DNA of 63,816 nucleotides, filler included, from Hyphochytrium catenoides (Eukaryota; Protista; Hyphochytriomycota), in assembly GCA_900088475.1 (NCBI GenBank). It is 14 parts of 14 records of this genome, joined end to end, with 100 filler letters (N's around TTAATTAATTAA, not from the genome) between each part and the next. Parts side by side here need not be neighbours in the genome. Positions count along the whole stretch, not along the records: positions 59,152 to 62,561 come from FLMG01000681.1; 13 more parts are not named here. The stretch is one strand, 5' to 3'. The notes below the pieces were generated by a model, which worked only from the letters and a program-made list of their open reading frames with translations, did no database searches and was not told where the DNA came from. Shown in pieces: positions 1,407-63,523 of the stretch (the stretch's first letter is position 1; the number at the start of each line of letters is the position of its first letter). The translations under genes and the position numbers were made by a program.

Positions 1407-2933
1407 ATGTTGAAGTCAGTCGTTTCCTCGATGATTAGGCGTCCGTTGACGTCCAACGGCGCTCAGCGTCTCAAGTCCACAGCCGCGGCTGTATCCTCAG
1501 CTTCCTCGGGTAGCGGGCTGGGGAGAAAGTCAGAGGTACGAGGGAAGAGACTCCTGGGAAAGAGGCTGCGGGACTGAAGGATAGAGCAAAGTAGCGGGAG
1601 TAGAGGGCGGGCAACCTTCTGCTTGCCCGGAAAGGCCGTTCTGAGAGACATCATAACGCCACTGACAATCGCTTGTCTTGCAGGAGCTGATGGCGAAAGA
1701 AGACCGATTCGGTGCTCACAATTACCATCCGTTGCCTGTTGTGCTAGACCGAGGAGAAGGTGCGAAATGGAGAAGGAAGAGAGGCCTATGGCCTACCTCT
1801 CTTCTCGTACCTCTCTTACTAGGTGTCTCAATGCCCCGCTTCATTACCCTACGTCCAGTCACTTGGCCTTCCCTTCCTCTTCTCGTGAACAAGGAAAAAG
1901 GCAGCTTTTAATCTTAGCTTTTGGTCTTTCTACCGCTTCTTGCAACAGGCGTCTTCGTCTGGGATGTGGAGGGGAAGCGGTATTATGACTTCTTGAGCGC
2001 TTACTCGGCAACGAACCAGGTAAAGAGTAGACCAAAGGCAGAGATAGAGAGGTGAAACCGGTAGCATAAGAGGCGCGAGATGAAAGAAGCAGACTCAAGG
2101 GGAGATCCAGAGTGTATTGGTGGTCTATGACGAAGTGAGAAGGGGAAGAGAAGGACGAAGAAGAGTCCTACGTAAAGCCTCGGCATAGGCCGGTGGCATC
2201 CTTTCCACCTTATTAAAGTGTGCTTGTAAGCGTCCTGCGGCTTGCGTGACTTGCAATAAGAACGGAGTGGTCCAGCATGGGCTTCGGGGGCGGAGAAGAA
2301 AGATAAATGAGAGCAAGCAGTGAGACTGAGGGTAGAGAGAAAGACGCGTCACATTTCTCAGGATGCTCGCTCCTTTCTATCCTACAGGGTCACTGCCATC
2401 CCAGAATTGTTCAGACTCTGGTGCAGCAGGCTTCTAAACTGCAGTTATGCTCCCGAGCCTTCTATAACAGTGTACTAGGAGAGTACGAGGAGTTTATCAC
2501 CAGCTTCTTTGGGTATGAGAAGGTAAAGAAACTCCTGCTCTTACCTGACCTGGCCTTCCCATTCTTGGCCATGGTCATGAACGCAAGAGCTCACTCTTAT
2601 ATGTAGGTTCTACCTATGAACACCGGCGTAGAGGCAGGAGAGACTGCTATCAAGCTTGCGAGGCGATGGGGTTATGATGTGAAGGGAATCAAGCCTCATA
2701 ATGTAAGATAAGAACCAAAGGGGGAATGTGGGAAGCAGTAGCGGGCACAGGTCTCTCGGAGAGAAGCGTAGTAGGTTTAGGTTCCAAGATAGCGGAGAGC
2801 GCGAGGGCAACATATTGAGGATAGCTCACCTGCTTTAACTCTTTGTAGGCCAAGGTTATTTTCTGTCAGAATAACTTCATGGGAAGAACGATCGCAGCGA
2901 TCTCAGCGTCTACCGATCCTTCAAGCTACACCG
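1407..2933 (+). CDS. OAT: Ornithine aminotransferase (class III PLP aminotransferase), mitochondrial; 5' part, truncated by contig end
   Basis: Spliced exons ~1407-1535, 1684-1759, 1949-2018, 2388-2522, 2607-2702, 2849-2933 with GT-AG introns give [12 protein letters not shown] (presequence-like)...[51 protein letters not shown]...SRAFYN...[27 protein letters not shown]...[14 protein letters not shown], all hallmark OAT motifs. Confidence 0.95.
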
Positions 2934-3151
2934 GTAAGCGCTCCTCGGCAGAAGAGGAGAGAAGAGAGAGAGAGAGACGAATATGGCACTGAGAAAGGGG
3001 ACGCGTGTGTAGCGAACTTTGCTGTTTATATGGAGTTCATCAGTCTTTTCAAAGTTCGACACAGTGCCATCATGTGCAGTCGATGTCAGGGAACAGGCAA
3101 GGACAAGAAATGTGAAATATTTGGAGCGCAGTAGCGAATAATAATCTAAGT

Positions 3152-3251
3152 NNNNNNNNNNNNNNNNNNNNNNNNNNNNNNNNNNNNNNNNNNNNTTAAT
3201 TAATTAANNNNNNNNNNNNNNNNNNNNNNNNNNNNNNNNNNNNNNNNNNNN
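3152..3251. other. Artificial contig spacer N44-TTAATTAATTAA-N44. Same spacer at 7450-7549, 11398-11497, 14194-14293, 16346-16445, 18363-18462, 44181-44280, 46844-46943, 48389-48488, 50261-50360, 51857-51956, 59052-59151, 62562-62661
   Basis: Identical 100-nt layout 13 times; the 12-mer gives stop codons in all six frames; genes are cut at these points. Confidence 0.97.
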
Positions 3252-3282
<31 letters not shown>

Positions 3283-6200
3283 CCTCTCTTTTGGCTCAAA
3301 CAAAGCCATCCTGCCCTACGTATCTTTGCTGGAGCCTCTGTCTCTGTTCTTTCTTTCTCTCGTCTTGTTTAAACCCTAAGGTAGGCAATAACCTTTCAAG
3401 CTCTTTCTCTCCGCCTTATGCATCTCTTTCTTGCTCGTTTTGCTTCGGATGCCGTGCTCTATAACAACGGTAGTAGAGACACGAAAAAACGAAAAGTACT
3501 TCCGATAGTTAAGACGCAGCCAGAAGCTTACATACAGCCCAACAGCGAGATTTTCGCTCGTGTATATAGTTCTAGTTTCGGTACCTTTCGGCATTTTTAT
3601 GATAATGTACACCAAAAGTGTAAGTCCGTCTCACGCTATTTATTACTCCACACTACTGTTTTACCTGGGTAAATAGGAAAGCCTAAGAGACAGTAGTACT
3701 ATCACCTGCTCTTGGTCGATAGGACTATGGACTCTCTGCTGCCCAGCATTAGCTGCTGAAGCATCATCCACTTCTTCGGTTGTGGTGGCTGGCGTCCTGG
3801 ACAAGCTCCTCTGTAGGTGGTGGCCAAGAAGAGTCGGAACCGAAGTGCCACGGAACACGGAGTAGCTAGTAGTAAGGGCGCGGGAGTGAGTGAGAAAGTG
3901 GGGGAAGAGCGAGACAGGGAGAGAGAAGAGAGGAGAGCAAAAGAGAGGGAGGAGAGAGAGAGACAGAGAGAGAGACAGAGAGAGAGACCTAGGAGACAGT
4001 ATTCGGTCGGTCTAGCTCCCTGCTAATCAGCGGCTATCCGCATTCTCTACGCGTACGATGAAGTCCTAGAAGTAGGTTCAGAGGTTCAGATGTCACTATG
4101 ATGACCAAGGGACCAAAGGATAGGATAATGGTAGAGCTTGGGACACTGCAGACGAAGCTGTGATGTCGTAACACTGGGTCTCCTCCGTGTATAAAACTCT
4201 AGGAGGGGGAACGGCTACTGCTCGCCAGTTCGCTGTCTTTCATAATAGCTGTACCAGAAGCGGGCTAAGCCTACTTTGATATTCGGCAACGCACGGAGCC
4301 GTTTGAGGAATCTTATCACTGAGACGGCCTCAGAGGCGTTTCTCAGACGTTTGACTTTGATGCTATCTCTTCACACTGACCAGGGAATGTGTGACATCGG
4401 TTCGCATCCAATTATAAGGAACTCACCCCCACCAGAATTGGTCTTTAGATGGATAGGAAAAAAAAAGAAGAAGACGGGACCCGGGCGGTAACAGCCGAGG
4501 AGCGGGTGCTAAAAGCTACGGTCTTCTCTGTTCGCCGTCTTCTTCCATGCACCAGGGTAAGAAGGATCAGAGATCTAGCTAAAGTCAGCTGCAAACTGAC
4601 GGACGCCCACACATTCGGGGTCGATCCAGAGCGGATCTTCACTGACTCTCTAGCTCTACGTAGACGCTCAGCATGCAGGCGCTAAAAGCGCATATGAGTC
4701 TGCCCAAAGAGGGAGAAGACCTTACACGCTTCCCTAGTAGGAGGCAGACATCGTACGAAAGGAGAGCAGGCACAGCTTTCTAAAAGTCTAGAAGCTTGCC
4801 TTCTCTGGTCTTCGACCAAGCGCCCAGAAAAGCTGCATTTGGCCCAGGTGGAGGGCTCTTCTACTTCATGCTCCTAACAAGAATACCCTCCCAGGCGGAG
4901 CGAGAGTGAGAGCGCCAGCCAAGTGCACCTGTCTCTTTCCTTCTCTCTTCTCCCTTGGTGAGATGGAAAAGAGACAGTGAATATAATATGTAGAGATTTA
5001 GAAGATTAATCGGAGAAGATTTTCAGTGGAACCCTGTTAACGTGTATCGGGCAAACGAGGCCCTGCTGCGGCACGTGGTATGCGAGCATCTAGCATTGAG
5101 CTTTGAGTCCTAACAACATGGCCTAGTTACTCCTGTTCTCATGCGCTTACAAAGATGAGATTGCTAACTAGGAATGGCCATCCCAGAACTTGATAGATCA
5201 TCTTTCGTGCTTCTTTATCGAGGGCAGACGAGTACCCAGAGCATCTATTATAACTTCTCGTCCTTGTGTGCTATACTGACATCGTGTCGAAAAGTGCAAG
5301 TGATCTGGAGAATGAGGTGGAAAACAGAGGAGAGAGAAGGGAGGCACAGAGGAGAGAGGGAGAGAGAGAGAAAGACGGAGGGATGATGCCAAAGTAGTAG
5401 CTGGGCTTCTTTCTCTGTGGCTTGTAACAAGAGACAAAGGACAAAAGGCCTAACTAATGAAGAGAGTCTATACCTATCTGCGATCTCATTGCGCGTTTAC
5501 GCTTGTCAAGATTTGCATGCAGCCTTGCTGCTGGCTCTAAGGTGCGCAGTCCCGGTTTCGTTGCCAAGAGAGTCGAACAGAGCGGCTCTTCTCAGCCTCA
5601 TGATGTCATGATGTCTCTCATTAGTAGGGAGAAACGGCCTTTGTGAATCCAGCTTTGTTGCTCCATCAACCTGATGAGCATGCGTCAGAGGACCCAACAA
5701 AATTCCTATCGACGCACGTGCCCTCTTGTGCTGCTTCTGTCCTCTCCTATGGTGTCTCTCTACGCCTATGTCGCTTTTGCTCTCCAGCATGGCAACTCGG
5801 CCTTGAGCGAGAGGATCCTCAGAACCTCAAAAAGGAGAAAAGCGGGAAGCGCGAAGGCACGTGGCAGAGGAAGTGAACCTCAAGTCAAAGACGTGACGCG
5901 CGCTGAAACGTGGGGCGAAGGAGAGGGCAAAGCGCCACGCTTTTATAAATGTCCAAAGAAGGAGAGCATTCGACCAGTCAGGGTGAGGCGCCGCCTCCGG
6001 GCTGAGGAGGTCATTTCTTGTCTCATCTTCAAGCTCTTCCTTTCGATGTACAGGGCGGACCATTCCTTCCCCGGTTTGCTGTCTCCCCTGTCCTCTCTCT
6101 GCTTCCTCCTCTTCTGCTCCGGAAAAGTTCCTCTTCTCTCCTTCCCCATATTCTCTGGCACTGTTAGGAGGCGAGGAGCAGAGAAGGCCTGAGCGGCAAC

Positions 6201-57882: not shown

Positions 57883-59156
57883 TTCTCTCTCTCTCTCTGT
57901 CTCTCTCTGTGTGTCTCTCTCTCTGTGTGTGTGTCTCTCTCTTTCTCTCTTTCTCTCTCTCTCTCTGTCTCTCTCTGTGTCTCTCTCTGTGTGTGTGTGT
58001 CTCTCTCTTTCTCTCTTTCTCTCTTTCTCTCTTTCTCTCTTTCTCTCTCTCTCNNNNNNNNNNNNNNNNNNNNNNNNNNNNNNNNNNNNNNNNNNNNNNN
58101 NNNNNNNNNNNNNNNNNNNNNNNNNCTCTCTCTCTCTCTCTCTCTCCCGCTCGCTCGCTCTCTCGCTCTCCTCCAGAAGCAATGAAAGTCCACCCTCCGA
58201 ACGATGACGCACTGTTGTAATCCAGAGGCGTTGTATCCAGCTAAAATGTATGAAGTTCGTCGCTGTAGTACCAACCAGTGGGCATAGTTAATATTAGGGG
58301 AACTAGAGAACAGCATAAGAACCTCAATCTGTCTATGGATGGACCTCCCGTGGGCCGAAGGTGGTGACCTGACCTTTTACAGCCATTCACAGTGAAGAAC
58401 TCAAGGGGGAACCGGCGGTAACCCCACTGTGTGGCCCACTCACCCGCAACCAATCTTTCAGCAGAGCAGTTCCAAACAGCGTATCAAGGAAACTCAAGGG
58501 CTTGTTGTCCTGAATTATTTCGTTTCTTCCCCGAGAAATGTTTCGTGTGAAAGCTTCGGTTGATACAGCCCTCCAAAGTCCGTTACACCTTGGAACCTCG
58601 ACTTTCTGGACACCAAACGATCATGAGTGCACTCAGACATTGGGACATCGCCCCCATCACCTTGTCCTCCTCCTCCCTGGCCCATTGGCCCCTTGCTTCT
58701 TCGCTCTTTACTCTGTTGATCACTTTGTCAACAGAGCGGGCTAGCCTGAGGACAGAGCTGGAGCGTGAACTGACCCCAGGAAGGTCCTTCTCACGCGGCA
58801 GGAAGAGAAGTTATCTTGGCGGCTGCGTTCACATCGATTGACAACCCCTATAGAGCGCGCCCAGCCTCTGCTCTGATGGTCTCTGCATACACCCTCGCCG
58901 GGCTAGCCTCTGCCTTTGGATGCGCAGCATAGCCTCTTCGATACATCTCTTCCTCTACGGACTGTTATTTCAGTAGCAGGTAGAGCTAAGGGCGAAGTCT
59001 TCTGGCTACGATAAGTAACCCCTTTGCGTGCACATGGTATCCCTTCTCAAGNNNNNNNNNNNNNNNNNNNNNNNNNNNNNNNNNNNNNNNNNNNNTTAAT
59101 TAATTAANNNNNNNNNNNNNNNNNNNNNNNNNNNNNNNNNNNNNNNNNNNNAGTTT

Positions 59157-59196
59157 TGTACGCTCCGGGATTTGAACCCAGGACCTCTGTCTTTGA
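59157..59196 (-). tRNA. 3' half of an interrupted tRNA-like sequence (variable region, T-arm/B box, acceptor 3' strand)
   Basis: Minus strand TCAAAGAC-AGAGGTC-CTGGG-TTCAAAT-CCCGG-AGCGTAC-A; T stem pairs; B box GGTTCAAATCC. Confidence 0.75.
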
Positions 59197-62100
59197 CAGG
59201 GTTTCGACTCCTTGCGAGATTGCAAATTGCACCCCTGCAATTTGCATGCAAATTGCGTCTGCGATTTATCGCCTGATAAATTGCACCCATAAATTGCACC
59301 TTGGGAGGTATGAGGATTGGGGATAGAAGGCCAAGACTCTCCTCAAATCTGGTATTAGAATGATTATAACAACCTACCCTAAGAATCCACCGTGATAACA
59401 AACCAGCTACAGGACTTACAAAGCTGTGAGATTCGTTTCTTACCTAAACCTTAACCCGCAGCATTCACCAACAGCAACCATTGTCAATGATCCATCATCG
59501 CAGCAAAGATGACAGAAGAAGAAGAGGAGTACTACTCACCATATCGATCATTGGTGGTGGAGGTGCGCTCTTCGATGATGGCGGCGCCGTGATGTGCCTT
59601 CTCTCCTCCGTGCCGCTAGTAGCTGCTACCCTCCTGCACCTAAACTATCTTTTCGCCCTGCTGCTGCTGCTGATGTTGTTGACTGCTGCTGGGTGGTGGT
59701 GGTGGTGGTGACATCATCCGTTCTTCTTCGGCGGTGAAAACGCAGTTAGCGGGCTCATAAAACTCTTCATCGCTTTTGAAGAAGCAGCACGATGCCGAAG
59801 CCCAGGTCATGGGCTTGGGTTCACTTCACCCAGTATACTCCTTCTAGAGAGGATGGTACTATACATGAGGATGGCGGAGGAGGAAGTGGCAACAACAAGA
59901 GGCAGCAGAAAGCCAGATGTAACTTTTGTGGCCATATGTTGACCAAAGATGCGAAGAGAATGTGCCAGCATCTGGCCAATAGCTGTAAGGAGGTCCCCTT
60001 GGAGGTCCGAGGCGATGCGGCTGAACGCCTAGCCAATCATCGCCGCGACACCGCCGGAAATAATAGTAACCGTACTACCCAAGACTATTCCTCCTCCGCC
60101 AACAACGACGGCCGCGCTACGCCCTCAACAGCAGAGAATGCTGCGACTGCTGGTACGGATGGGCATGGTGCTCGCAATGGGTCCAGCTCTAGACATTCAC
60201 AGCAGGACATCAGGGCTGCAAGGGGAGCAAGGAGTGGTGTGGTTCAGATCTCAAGGGACGAGATGGAAGCCCTACATCTGGAATTTGCTGAATCCATGTT
60301 TCACTCTGGACTGTCTCTTAGTGTCTTCAAGAACGACGACAGGTGGACAAGATTTTTTCAGAAGCTCAATCCCGCTTTTAGGCTACCATCTAACGATGTC
60401 CTAGGAGGGAGGCTGCTGGACATTACGTACGAGCAGGTGAAGGAGCGGGTGACGCAACGCGTAAAAGAGAGCAAGGGTGGATTGACATTGGTATCAGACG
60501 GGTGGAGCAACTTGAGGCGAGAATCTATCATTAACTTCATGGTTACTTCTCCCCAGCCTTTCTTTGTGGAAGCAGTGGCATCCGGCACCGAACGGCATAC
60601 AGCCCAGTACATGGCGAAGGAATTGGATAGAGTCATTGAGAAGTGTGGAGGAGGCCCGGATTGGCTGAACCCAAACAAGGTTGGAGTGACAGCGGTCATC
60701 ACTGACAACGCTGCCAACATGAAGGCCGCGTGGGCTATCCTTCAAAGAAAGTATGAGACAATGCTTTTTCTCCCATGCCTGTCTCATACCTTGCAGCTCC
60801 TCATCCAGGATCTCTGCAAGGTACCAGTGGTGGCGAAGCACCTTAAAAGAGGAAAAAAGGTGGTGAAGTACTTCAAGAACAAGCAGATCCCGGCATCAGT
60901 CTTACGTGAGGAGCTTCCCCGAGCGGGTGTGCGAGCGAAGTCTCTGAAGCTGCCTGGAAAAACAAGATGGGGTTCTCAGCTCATCATGCTTCAGTCCTTG
61001 GTGGACGTCAAGCGCGGACTTCAGGCGGTGCAAGAACTGGCTGGATCTGCAGAAGACCCCACTGATGGCTACCCCTGGGAGAGAGGTGTACTAGACCTTG
61101 TGGGGAGCTCTCATTTTTGGAAGGGTGTTGCTGGAGTCATCCACATTCTTTCCGTGCCAGTCAACCTTCTCAATTACTGTCAGAGTGATCATCCTTCCTT
61201 GATGGAGGTTGAGCGCATTAGAACCGAGCTGGAGGCGCATTTGCTCTCTCCCAATCTTGGGGATGGAAAGCTGGTTATACCTGATGAAGACAAAAGCGCC
61301 ATCGAAGAGGCCCTTCGTGCCAGGCTTAAGATGATGGACCATCCTGTTTATGTTTTGGCCGACATTTTGGATCCCCGGAGCAGGGGGCAGCTACTAGAGG
61401 ATCACGATCGATGGGAAGCGTCTACCCGTTTTTTGGTAAAACTATGTGGCGGCAATATAGCAGTGGAGAAGGAGGTCTTCGAAGCACTGGACCAGTACCG
61501 AGCCCAAACCGGACCATTTAGGCCATATCTTTGGGAACAATTGCAGAAAGACGGCGCCAGGGCCGACATGTCTCCCTTTGATTGGTGGCTAGCTCTGCCA
61601 CCTATGGTTCAGAAGAAGTGCACTCATCTCCGCGCAATAGCGCTGAAGATTCTTTCCATACCCGCTTCGTCAGCGACGGCAGAGCGATGCTGGAGCACTT
61701 TCGGCTTTGTCCATAACAAAATAAGGAACAGGCTGAAGAACGATAAAGTCATCAAGCTTGTCTACTGCTATCAAAACTTGCGGAACCTGGATAATGCTGA
61801 ACTCGGTCGATTCGCGACTGCTCGGAAGAGAAGAGATCGAGATGCTCCTATACCAAACAGCAGCAGTGACGATGAAGCCGGGCCTGGGGCGAGCGGGGGA
61901 ATATCAAGGCCCAGGGGTCAGGCAAGAAGAGGAGCAAACAGAGGTGGTGGAGCTAACGATGAAGAAATGAAGAACGAAGATGATCTTTTTGGATCGGCGG
62001 GGATAGACTTTGCTGATCCGTCCACGCTTTCTTCTTCTTCTGACGAAGAAGATAGTGATAATAGTGATATCGATGAAGAAGAGGGAGGAGATGATGATGA

Positions 62101-62497
62101 TCTTACCGGTTGATTGACCTAAAGATGAGAAGGGAAGATTTGGATCCTCCTAGAAAGGGAAGCTTCATTGGCTTGCGCTAATAGGGGGCAACAATATAAT
62201 CGTCATCACTCTACAATACCATCAACTGCCATCAACTGCCAATATTTTAGAGATAGAAAATTAATAGGATTTTAATAATTGTAGTCCTAGAAATTGGTTG
62301 TTCAGCCATCCACTATATAACAAAGCACAATATACATCCTTGCATTATCCTGTATAAGCTTAAAGCTATTACTGATAAGTATAAGGTAAACAGCCCCATC
62401 AGGAATTCTTATCTCACGTGATTATCACGTGACGTTGCATGCAATTTGCATGCAAGTATGCGACTTATAATAAATTGCATGCAATTTCGAAACCCTG
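59197..62497 (+). mobile_element. Complete autonomous hAT DNA transposon (3301 bp)
   Basis: TIRs CAGGGTTTCGA (59197-59207) / TCGAAACCCTG (62487-62497); perfect 8-bp TSD GTCTTTGA at 59189-59196 and 62498-62505; subterminal AATTGCA/TTGCATGCAA repeats at both ends; internal transposase. Confidence 0.96.
59792..62113 (+). CDS. hAT transposase (BED zinc finger, DUF659-type core, hAT dimerisation domain, acidic tail)
   Basis: WAWVHF...ARCNFC...QHLANSC (BED); LVSDGWS, ITDNAANM, CLSHTLQL (CxxH), KTRWGS, ILDPR, PFDWW...LKILSIPASSATAERCWS (D-D-E triad intact); intronless, no stops. Confidence 0.96.
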   Translation: MPKPRSWAWVHFTQYTPSREDGTIHEDGGGGSGNNKRQQKARCNFCGHMLTKDAKRMCQHLANSCKEVPLEVRGDAAERLANHRRDTAGNNSNRTTQDYSSSANNDGRATPSTAENAATAGTDGHGARNGSSSRHSQQDIRAARGARSGVVQISRDEMEALHLEFAESMFHSGLSLSVFKNDDRWTRFFQKLNPAFRLPSNDVLGGRLLDITYEQVKERVTQRVKESKGGLTLVSDGWSNLRRESIINFMVTSPQPFFVEAVASGTERHTAQYMAKELDRVIEKCGGGPDWLNPNKVGVTAVITDNAANMKAAWAILQRKYETMLFLPCLSHTLQLLIQDLCKVPVVAKHLKRGKKVVKYFKNKQIPASVLREELPRAGVRAKSLKLPGKTRWGSQLIMLQSLVDVKRGLQAVQELAGSAEDPTDGYPWERGVLDLVGSSHFWKGVAGVIHILSVPVNLLNYCQSDHPSLMEVERIRTELEAHLLSPNLGDGKLVIPDEDKSAIEEALRARLKMMDHPVYVLADILDPRSRGQLLEDHDRWEASTRFLVKLCGGNIAVEKEVFEALDQYRAQTGPFRPYLWEQLQKDGARADMSPFDWWLALPPMVQKKCTHLRAIALKILSIPASSATAERCWSTFGFVHNKIRNRLKNDKVIKLVYCYQNLRNLDNAELGRFATARKRRDRDAPIPNSSSDDEAGPGASGGISRPRGQARRGANRGGGANDEEMKNEDDLFGSAGIDFADPSTLSSSSDEEDSDNSDIDEEEGGDDDDLTG

Positions 62498-62546
62498 GTC
62501 TTTGATGCCGACACCTTAACCAGTATGCACCATACACCAAACGTAC
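62498..62546 (-). tRNA. 5' half of the interrupted tRNA-like sequence (acceptor 5' strand, D arm/A box, anticodon region)
   Basis: Minus strand GTACGTT-TG-GTGTATGGTGCAT-A-CTGGTTAAGGTGTCGGCA-TCAAAGAC; GTACGTT pairs 7/7 with AGCGTAC at 59158-59164. Confidence 0.75.
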
Positions 62547-63523
62547 TCTTGACTAATCTCCNNNNNNNNNNNNNNNNNNNNNNNNNNNNNNNNNNNNNNN
62601 NNNNNTTAATTAATTAANNNNNNNNNNNNNNNNNNNNNNNNNNNNNNNNNNNNNNNNNNNNTCTCTCTCTCTCTCTCTCTTTCTAGCGTGGTGCTATTCC
62701 TTCCCTCTGTCTTCCCTACTGAGCCTCTCCCGCGCTTCATACATATTTATTATAAAATGTTAAGAACAGAGAGAGAAGGGGAACCTCTCCTTGTGCTAAA
62801 CTGCACGTTCTTACTCTCTCTCTCTTTCTTGAATGCCCTGGACTTGCCCGACATCTTCTCAAGCGGGCACGTTCCAGGCGCTGGAAGAGGAGGAAAAGGA
62901 GATAGATACGGCTTATCTAGACCGGTCTCAGTAATTAACGCCAGAGCAGGGACAATCTCAGTTCTGAGCCACCCTCAAGCACGAGGCGCAAACTATTTTA
63001 GAGTCACAAGGATCGGAGGACCGGGTTGCCAAGAGAGGAGAAACCTGGCAATGATGATTCCATGCATGTCCATTTGCTAGCCGTGAGGTGATCTCTGCGC
63101 GCTCAAACCCGTAAAGTGATAGCTGTGTGAGGAGACGAGAGGGGATCACATACGAAAGCGAGACGAACTAAGACGACAGAGAAGAGACAGAGAGAGAGAG
63201 AGAGACTGAAATGAGAGAGAGGCCGAGTAAGCAGCAGAGTTCAGAGATGTTCCTGTACACGGAAGGTGAAGAAAATCTTTCCCAAGATCTGCAGATGAAT
63301 TCTGAAGCTTCTCGGATTCCCCTTCTTGGTCCATATGCGACAATCTCGGGCCCCATGGTGCATTCATGGAGTTATTTAGATCTTTCTATAGTAAGATTAT
63401 GAGGAATCAACTATGATGGAAAAGGAAAAGGGGTAAAATGCGTCGATACAAGGTCCAAAGAAGAGACAAGAACAGGAAACAAACAGCCCGCAGACCCGAC
63501 CAGAAGTGGCAAAGAGCAACAGA

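What the first reader, a model, noticed from the sequence alone, without database searches (positions are those of the whole stretch)
59157..62546. Intact hAT transposon inserted into the anticodon region of a tRNA-like gene
Seen: removing the element and one TSD gives, on the minus strand, an 81-nt sequence GTACGTT TG GTGTATGGTGCAT A CTGGT TAAGGTGTCGGCATCAAA GACAG AGGTC CTGGG TTCAAAT CCCGG AGCGTAC A. It has a 7/7 acceptor stem (one G-U), a D arm with A-box-like TGGTGTATGG, a complete T arm/B box, and an anticodon arm about 11 nt too long (intron-like) that contains the 8-bp target TCAAAGAC. Established: the 3' half closely resembles eukaryotic tRNA-Pro and AGG sits at about the anticodon position; tRNA/snRNA-gene targeting is known for Dada DNA transposons, and rDNA targeting for Pokey; I know of no tRNA-targeting hAT family. 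Inference: this is either a chance hit in a tRNA pseudogene/SINE head (A33, T37 and a stem mismatch are non-canonical; the contig ends right beside both halves, as expected for a repeat) or a hAT lineage that targets Pol III genes. One insertion cannot distinguish these.
Basis: partly seen in the sequence, partly recalled or inferred. Interest (0 to 1): 0.8.

Follow-up and report, generated by a model that had tools for sequence, protein, structure and literature searches.

The report
hAT transposon inside a high-copy tRNA-like repeat
An intact, apparently young hAT "cut-and-paste" transposon sits inside one copy of a very abundant tRNA-Pro-like repeat; I found nothing showing that the transposon aims at tRNA genes, so it is most likely an ordinary insertion into a common repeat.

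Summary
Positions 59197-62497 are a 3301-bp hAT element with perfect 11-bp terminal inverted repeats (TIRs), a perfect 8-bp target-site duplication (TSD) GTCTTTGA, and an uninterrupted 773-aa transposase (DUF659 + hAT dimerisation domain, D/D/E and CxxH motifs). Removing the element and one TSD gives an 81-nt tRNA-like sequence on the minus strand. ARAGORN calls it an odd tRNA (8-nt loop, extra arm), against 0 of 2000 shuffles. With the two letters most copies carry, ARAGORN calls it tRNA-Pro(AGG).

The flank is not a unique tRNA gene. In the source organism's reads, summed contig depth on the flanks is roughly 400-1200 times that of the element's interior, and many variant empty sites exist. 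One contig repeats the unit 379 bp further on.

tRNA targeting could not be tested properly because the flanks of the other 10-25 copies could not be retrieved. Two glimpses of other ends show non-tRNA flanks. The nearest relatives (about 33% identity) sit at seven or more unrelated, non-tRNA sites.

Verdict: a new hAT family member inserted into a tRNA-derived repeat. Chance is favoured (about 0.7); targeting remains possible (about 0.15).

The parts
59197..62497 (+). Complete hAT element, 3301 bp
   Evidence: Bounded by perfect 11-bp TIRs and a perfect 8-bp TSD
59189..59196 (.). Left copy of the TSD, GTCTTTGA
   Evidence: Identical to 62498-62505
62498..62505 (.). Right copy of the TSD, GTCTTTGA
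59197..59207 (+). Left TIR, CAGGGTTTCGA
   Evidence: Inverted repeat I17, 11/11 complementary
62487..62497 (+). Right TIR, TCGAAACCCTG
   Evidence: Inverted repeat I17
59221..59301 (.). Left subterminal repeats (AAATTGCACC / TGCAAATTGCA motifs); inferred transposase-binding sites
   Evidence: Repeat families D1, D2, D7, D17 and inverted repeats I1-I3, I18, I19 are shared with the right end. The binding role is inferred from what is known of hAT elements.
62432..62487 (.). Right subterminal repeats (TTGCATGCAATTT motifs)
   Evidence: D1, D7, I1-I3, I6, I11
59792..62113 (+). Transposase ORF, 773 aa, no intron and no stop
   Evidence: Pfam DUF659 and Dimer_Tnp_hAT. Hermes transposase matches at E about 1e-6, with the SATAERCWS and CLSH motifs aligned. 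The motifs DGWS, TDNAANM, CLSH and AERCWS are visible in the translation.
59157..59196 (-). 3' part of the tRNA-like unit: extra arm, T arm / B box GGTTCAAATCC, 3' strand of the acceptor stem, discriminator A
   Evidence: ARAGORN on the empty site. Rfam finds only T-arm-type matches here. Summed contig depth is far above the element's.
62506..62546 (-). 5' part of the tRNA-like unit: 5' strand of the acceptor stem, D arm, anticodon arm
   Evidence: ARAGORN. No Rfam match on this half alone. Highest summed depth of the piece.
62547..62561 (-). 5' leader of this copy; other copies diverge from it beyond 62550
   Evidence: Loose ends at 62550 in X1-X3

Best explanation
A structurally intact, probably still mobile autonomous hAT transposon has inserted into one unit of a high-copy tRNA-Pro(AGG)-derived repeat family (a tRNA pseudogene array or SINE-like family). 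The insertion used the ordinary hAT cut-and-paste mechanism and made an 8-bp TSD. The site was hit because this repeat offers roughly a thousand near-identical copies of a tolerated, selectively neutral target, not because the transposase recognises tRNA genes. Shown: the element's anatomy, the tRNA-like nature of the empty site, the high copy number and variability of the flank, the existence of empty copies, and the existence of internally deleted non-autonomous derivatives. Inferred: that the choice of site was unspecific, and that the element is active.
For: Anatomy. Repeat nature of the flank: in run X1, mean summed contig depth is 203 over the element's interior, about 2000-5000 over its terminal ~100-300 bp, 37,237 in the bin that is 40% left flank, and 150,415 in the bin that is 60% right flank. 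Runs X2 and X3 show the same pattern. Several distinct contigs skip 3309 bp, i.e. are empty sites, with different letters in and around the TSD. Loose ends show diverged versions of both halves. The majority letters give tRNA-Pro(AGG). Contig 23 of a soil metagenome carries the exact empty site and the start of another unit 379 bp further on. The repeat's 5' half also occurs in soil, rhizosphere, plant and indoor metagenomes. No sign of targeting: one contig end in X3 runs from the right TIR into a flank that is not tRNA-like, and an X4 contig has the left TIR beside unrelated sequence. The nearest relatives found (P0003, P0013 and P0016 families, about 33% identity) have their own TIR (TAGTGATGT...). 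One has a complete 8-bp TSD (GGAAGGGC in L001). Together they show at least seven different flanks on five contigs, none tRNA-like, and ARAGORN finds no tRNA in 16 loci. In the literature I read, the only DNA-transposon superfamily reported to target tRNA/snRNA genes is Dada, not hAT (PMC3706591, PMC8869645).
Against: If the repeat has about 400-1200 copies of 100-380 bp in a genome of about 60-100 Mb (my rough inference), it covers only about 0.05-0.5% of the genome. A random hit by one given copy is therefore unlikely a priori. The case is explained largely by selection: it was picked out of a very large scan because of the coincidence. The flanks of the other 10-25 element ends could not be recovered, so the chance reading is favoured but not demonstrated. 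The tool warns that summed contig depth is not a copy number.
Confidence: 0.7

Rival explanations
1. This hAT family has a real insertion preference for this tRNA-like repeat. The preference could be sequence-specific for the TCAAAGAC region, as Dada elements are for their RNA genes, or could come from tethering to Pol III chromatin. This copy would then be one of several at the same position.
For: The insertion lies inside a tRNA-like unit with an intact B box. The a-priori chance of that is low if the repeat is under 0.5% of the genome (inferred). No loose ends 'before 59197' were among the 20 shown for X1-X3, although 66 rows were hidden.
Against: Only one insertion has been observed. One X3 contig leaves the right TIR into a non-tRNA flank, and the X4 fragment of the left end has an unrelated flank. 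The nearest relatives show no tRNA association. I found no hAT reported as target-specific. The transposase has no extra domain beyond a BED-like CCHC motif, DUF659 and the hAT dimerisation domain.
Confidence: 0.15
2. The flank is one of a large array of functional tRNA-Pro genes with an unusual extra arm or intron, so the insertion has knocked out a working Pol III gene. This could apply whether the hit was chance or targeted.
For: The acceptor stem is perfect, and T8, GG in the D loop, the T-loop GGTTCAAATCC and discriminator A are present. Most copies share a TATA-like upstream sequence (loose end at 62550). There is a hint of a tandem 379-bp arrangement.
Against: The anticodon stem is poor in both versions (4 bp plus an 8-nt loop here; two mismatches in the majority version). 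An extra 12-nt segment is not expected in tRNA-Pro (my knowledge of tRNA classes, not tested). No Rfam match was found for the 5' half. The copies are strongly diverged, with loose-end agreement of 0.59-0.77, which fits pseudogenes or SINEs.
Confidence: 0.1
3. The juxtaposition is an assembly artefact: a chimeric contig has joined a hAT end to a repeat.
For: The contig is short and ends in repeats on both sides.
Against: Both junctions show the same 8-bp TSD. The two flanks fit together into one cloverleaf with a 7-bp acceptor stem. The same element is held at 0.92-0.94 of its words in two runs filed in 2011 and 2017.
Confidence: 0.02

Closest known systems
hAT superfamily autonomous elements (Hermes, Ac, hobo type)
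   Same: 8-bp TSD and short TIRs beginning with CAG. Subterminal short repeats. A single transposase with an RNase-H-like DDE core, a CxxH motif and a C-terminal hAT dimerisation domain (Pfam PF05699). The Hermes structures match at the C-terminus.
   Different: At most 35% identity to any protein found, so this is a separate family with its own TIR. The N-terminal CCHC motif did not reach the Pfam zf-BED threshold. The C-terminal tail is long and rich in acidic residues and serine.
Dada DNA transposons (PMC3706591, PMC8869645)
   Same: A DNA transposon found inside a multicopy small-RNA-like gene.
   Different: Dada makes 6-7-bp TSDs and has its own transposase. Its specificity rests on many independent copies at the same site. 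Here the TSD is 8 bp, the transposase is hAT, and only one insertion has been seen.
tRNA-derived SINEs / tRNA pseudogene arrays
   Same: A high-copy, sequence-variable family whose unit keeps the acceptor stem, a B box and a recognisable parent anticodon loop (Pro, AGG).
   Different: The body, tail and TSDs of a SINE could not be seen because the piece ends 5 nt and 15 nt beyond the unit. One metagenome contig suggests a 379-bp tandem spacing, which fits a gene or pseudogene array better than a dispersed SINE.
Pokey (piggyBac) in Daphnia rDNA (PMC3849761)
   Same: A DNA transposon found in a multicopy RNA gene.
   Different: A different superfamily and target, and its specificity is demonstrated genome-wide.

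Membership tests
hAT superfamily | 8-bp target-site duplication | tested here: met
   GTCTTTGA on both sides, 8/8 identical
hAT superfamily | Short terminal inverted repeats | tested here: met
   11/11 complementary, CAGGGTTTCGA
hAT superfamily | Transposase with a C-terminal hAT dimerisation domain | tested here: met
   PF05699, E 1.2e-10, above the curated cut-off. Hermes chains match at E about 1e-6.
hAT superfamily | Catalytic D, D, E and the CxxH motif | tested here: met
   DGWS, TDNAANM, CLSH and AERCWS are present in the translation. CLSH and AERCWS are aligned to Hermes. The two D assignments rest on motif resemblance only.
hAT superfamily | N-terminal BED zinc finger | tested here: inconclusive
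   The motif CNFC...H...C is present at residues 43-65, but no Pfam zf-BED match at E <= 0.01.
tRNA gene (canonical) | 7-bp acceptor stem, T arm with GTTCRANYC, D arm with GG | tested here: met
   ARAGORN cloverleaf; 0 of 2000 shuffles gave a call
tRNA gene (canonical) | 5-bp anticodon stem with a 7-nt loop (U33, purine 37) | tested here: not met
   This copy has a 4-bp stem and an 8-nt loop. The majority version has a 7-nt loop, TTAGGGT, but two mismatched stem pairs.
tRNA gene (canonical) | Score above threshold with a tRNA covariance model (Rfam RF00005 / tRNAscan-SE) | not testable with these tools
   The Rfam tool reads only stored sequence, not a reconstituted site. On the halves alone it finds only T-arm-type matches in the 3' half and nothing in the 5' half.
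tRNA-derived SINE | High copy number with diverged copies | tested here: met
   Flank depth is hundreds of times the element's interior, with many variant empty sites
tRNA-derived SINE | tRNA-unrelated body, 3' tail, dispersed copies each with its own TSD | not testable with these tools
   The piece ends beside the unit. A shared upstream sequence and a 379-bp spacing argue more for an array.
Dada superfamily | 6-7-bp TSD and a Dada-type transposase | tested here: not met
   The TSD is 8 bp and the transposase has hAT domains. Dada features are taken from PMC3706591.
Target-specific transposon (any superfamily) | Many independent copies at the same position of the target gene family | tested here: inconclusive
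   Only one insertion is visible. Two partial glimpses of other ends show other flanks. Public collections gave no further copies.

The most novel reading that the evidence does not exclude
A hAT family that preferentially integrates at one position of a multicopy tRNA-Pro-like Pol III unit. As far as I found, this would be the first tRNA-directed hAT and the second DNA-transposon lineage after Dada to use small-RNA gene families as a safe haven.
Probability: 0.13. Interest if true: 0.7.

Novelty: new member of a known kind. Interest (0 to 1): 0.27.

Why it matters
If the chance reading is right, this is a routine annotation. It describes a new, apparently active hAT family with an autonomous copy and deleted derivatives, and an abundant tRNA-Pro-derived repeat in a soil- or plant-associated eukaryote. 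It would matter only if further copies prove to share the site. Site-specific DNA transposons are rare (Dada, Pokey), and a hAT transposase with built-in target choice would be of interest for targeted gene delivery.

Tried and rejected
2. The window's ORF is not on record in the contig index, and no protein above 35% identity exists in the protein collection. Other copies from the same genome could therefore not be fetched by protein.
3. Metagenome scan for the left TIR plus subterminal 20-mer: 0 hits.
4. Metagenome scan for an empty-site 20-mer: one hit, in a bacterial coding region, i.e. chance.
5. Viral-contig scans: 0 hits for the TIR. The 11 hits for an 18-mer of the target all lie in unrelated phage genes.
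6. Rfam on the two halves separately gives only T-arm-type matches (tmRNA 3' end, mascRNA) and nothing for the 5' half. The full reconstituted site cannot be given to that tool.
7. An automatic TIR+TSD finder on the relatives' contigs mostly failed, because the contigs end at the element borders. Borders were set instead by comparing contigs of the same element.
8. I checked whether the repeat is one of the Phytophthora parasitica satellites (PMC7290008). The monomer sizes (about 326 and 142 bp) do not fit, and tRNA occurs only once in that paper's text. Rejected as unsupported.
9. The organism was not identified.
Full report
**1. What is in the sequence**

The piece 59152-62561 contains a 3301-bp element at 59197-62497.
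- Its ends are perfect 11-bp terminal inverted repeats (TIRs), CAGGGTTTCGA / TCGAAACCCTG.
- It is flanked by an identical 8-bp target-site duplication (TSD), GTCTTTGA.
- Both subterminal regions carry repeated AAATTGCA-type motifs in both orientations. This is the usual layout of hAT transposase-binding sites, but that role is inferred.
- One uninterrupted ORF (59792-62113, 773 aa) matches Pfam DUF659 (8e-27) and the hAT dimerisation domain (1e-10).
- The C-terminal part aligns to the solved Hermes transposase, including the motif with the catalytic E (SATAERCWS) and the CxxH motif (CLSH). DGWS and TDNAANM supply the two candidate aspartates (motif resemblance only).
- The N-terminus has a BED-like CCHC motif that does not reach Pfam significance.

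The element is a structurally intact autonomous hAT. The best protein relatives are only 35% identical, so it is a family of its own.

**2. The empty site**

- ARAGORN finds no tRNA with the element in place and one tRNA-like gene in the reconstituted site. None of 2000 dinucleotide shuffles gave a call.
- The call is non-canonical: 'tRNA-?(Leu|Pro)(aagg)', with a 4-bp anticodon stem, an 8-nt loop and a long extra arm.
- The 8-bp target TCAAAGAC lies in that extra arm, 3' of the anticodon arm.
- Reads of the same organism show that most copies carry two other letters here (…CCTGGTTAGGGTG…). With those two letters ARAGORN calls tRNA-Pro(AGG) with a 7-nt loop TTAGGGT, a stem with two mismatches, and the same extra arm. 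That test sequence is this copy with two substitutions, not a real copy.
- Rfam could only be run on the two halves. The 3' half gives T-arm-type matches and the 5' half gives nothing.

The unit is clearly tRNA-derived, most likely from tRNA-Pro(AGG). It fails the canonical anticodon-arm test.

**3. The flank is a high-copy repeat**

Contigs of three runs labelled with the source organism (X1-X3) and of one soil metagenome (X4) were laid on the piece.

| Region (run X1) | Summed contig depth |
|---|---|
| Element interior (one 1892-bp contig, no differences) | 203 |
| Terminal few hundred bp of the element | about 1800-5200 |
| Bin 59152-59265, 40% left flank | 37,237 |
| Bin 62458-62561, 60% right flank | 150,415 |

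- X2 and X3 show the same pattern.
- Correcting for the share of element in those bins gives roughly 87,000 (left) and 240,000 (right), i.e. about 400-1200 times the interior. This is my arithmetic. The tool warns that summed depth is not a copy number, so it is an order of magnitude only.
- Contig totals of 49, 83 and 101 Mb at interior depths of about 4, 21 and 203 suggest a genome of about 60-100 Mb, with the interior near single-copy depth. This is inference.
- Several different contigs skip 3309 bp, so they are empty sites. They differ in and around the TSD, and loose ends show diverged versions of both halves (agreement 0.59-0.98).
- Beyond 62550, other copies share a different, AT-rich, TATA-like upstream sequence.
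- An X4 contig carries the exact empty version of this locus, leader and trailer included. The start of another unit follows 379 bp further on, a hint of a tandem or clustered arrangement.
- An exact empty site is also present in X1 at depth 237, close to the element's 203. Either the insertion is heterozygous or polymorphic, or an identical neighbouring unit exists.
- The 5' half of the unit also occurs in soil, rhizosphere, plant and indoor metagenomes.

**4. Does the family target such units?**

This is the crux, and it could not be settled.
- The family has other members. The termini are 10-25 times deeper than the interior.
- Joints reveal internally deleted derivatives: 60094>61792 at about single-copy depth, and a roughly 700-bp derivative at about 9 times the interior's depth (joints 59701>61847, 61896>62084 and 62115>62387). 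Their flanks were not recoverable.
- Read laying can be called only once and hid 66 loose-end rows.
- The ORF is not in the contig index, and pattern scans of the metagenome and viral collections found no further copy.

What was visible argues weakly against strict specificity:
- One X3 contig runs from the right TIR into GTAAGTTCTGATG…, which is not the tRNA-like sequence.
- An X4 contig has the first 37 bp of the left end between unrelated sequences.

At the lineage level, the closest relatives with retrievable DNA are the P0003, P0013 and P0016 families.
- They are about 33% identical and have their own TIR, TAGTGATGT….
- A complete 8-bp TSD (GGAAGGGC) is seen in L001.
- Together they show at least seven different flanks on five contigs, none tRNA-like, and ARAGORN finds no tRNA in any of 16 loci.
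- These relatives are distant, so this only shows that tRNA association is not a trait of the wider group.

**5. Comparison with what is known**

The element meets every tested defining feature of hAT and fails those of Dada (6-7-bp TSD, own transposase; PMC3706591). In the papers I read, Dada is the only DNA-transposon superfamily reported to be specific for tRNA/snRNA genes, and Pokey (piggyBac) is the one for rDNA. I found no report of a target-specific hAT. The flank behaves like a tRNA-derived SINE head or a tRNA pseudogene array. Which of the two could not be decided.

**6. Verdict**

The most likely reading (about 0.7) is an ordinary hAT insertion into a member of an abundant, probably neutral tRNA-Pro-derived repeat, noticed because of the coincidence. 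A real preference of this family for the repeat keeps about 0.15. The a-priori chance of one given copy hitting a repeat that makes up less than about 0.5% of the genome is low, but the case was selected for that coincidence, and the few other flanks glimpsed are not tRNA-like. The remaining weight covers two readings: that the unit is a working tRNA gene, and that the junction is an assembly artefact. The second is very unlikely, given the matching TSDs and a cloverleaf that closes across the two flanks. The organism was not identified.

Noticed in passing
window 59197-62497 (joints 60094>61792; 59701>61847; 61896>62084; 62115>62387): Reads show internally deleted, non-autonomous derivatives of the element. 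One has an 11-nt filler and sits at about single-copy depth. Another, roughly 700 bp long, sits at about 9 times the interior's depth. The termini are 10-25 times deeper than the interior. The family therefore looks recently active.
   Followed up: partly
window 59152-59188 joined to 62498-62561: An exact empty version of this very locus, leader and trailer included, exists in the organism's own runs at about the same depth as the element, and also in a soil metagenome contig. The insertion may be heterozygous or polymorphic, or an identical neighbouring unit may exist.
   Followed up: no
soil metagenome contig 23 of run X4 (laid on window 59152-59188, 62498-62561, and again on 59152-59169): The tRNA-like unit starts again 379 bp further on in the same orientation. 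This suggests a tandem or clustered arrangement rather than a dispersed SINE.
   Followed up: no
window 62498-62561 versus 59152-59196: The 5' half of the tRNA-like unit has about 2-3 times the summed depth of the 3' half. A subfamily of copies has a strongly degenerate T arm (loose ends before 62501).
   Followed up: no
beyond window 62550 (loose ends): Most other copies share an AT-rich upstream sequence with a TATA-like run about 10-25 nt before the tRNA-like 5' end. This copy has a different leader.
   Followed up: no
window 59640-59711: A run of CTG and GGT triplet repeats lies in the 5' untranslated part of the element, upstream of the transposase start.
   Followed up: no
window 61830-62110 (transposase residues about 680-773): The transposase has a long C-terminal tail rich in Ser, Asp and Glu after the dimerisation domain. 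Reads show 6-nt in-frame insertions at 61870/61872 in other copies.
   Followed up: no
L001 1080-1646, L008 918-1364, L014 1071-1658: The related hAT families (TIR TAGTGATGTGGGCC…) carry a second upstream ORF of 148-195 aa without a Pfam match, in the same orientation as the transposase. It may be an upstream exon or an accessory gene.
   Followed up: no
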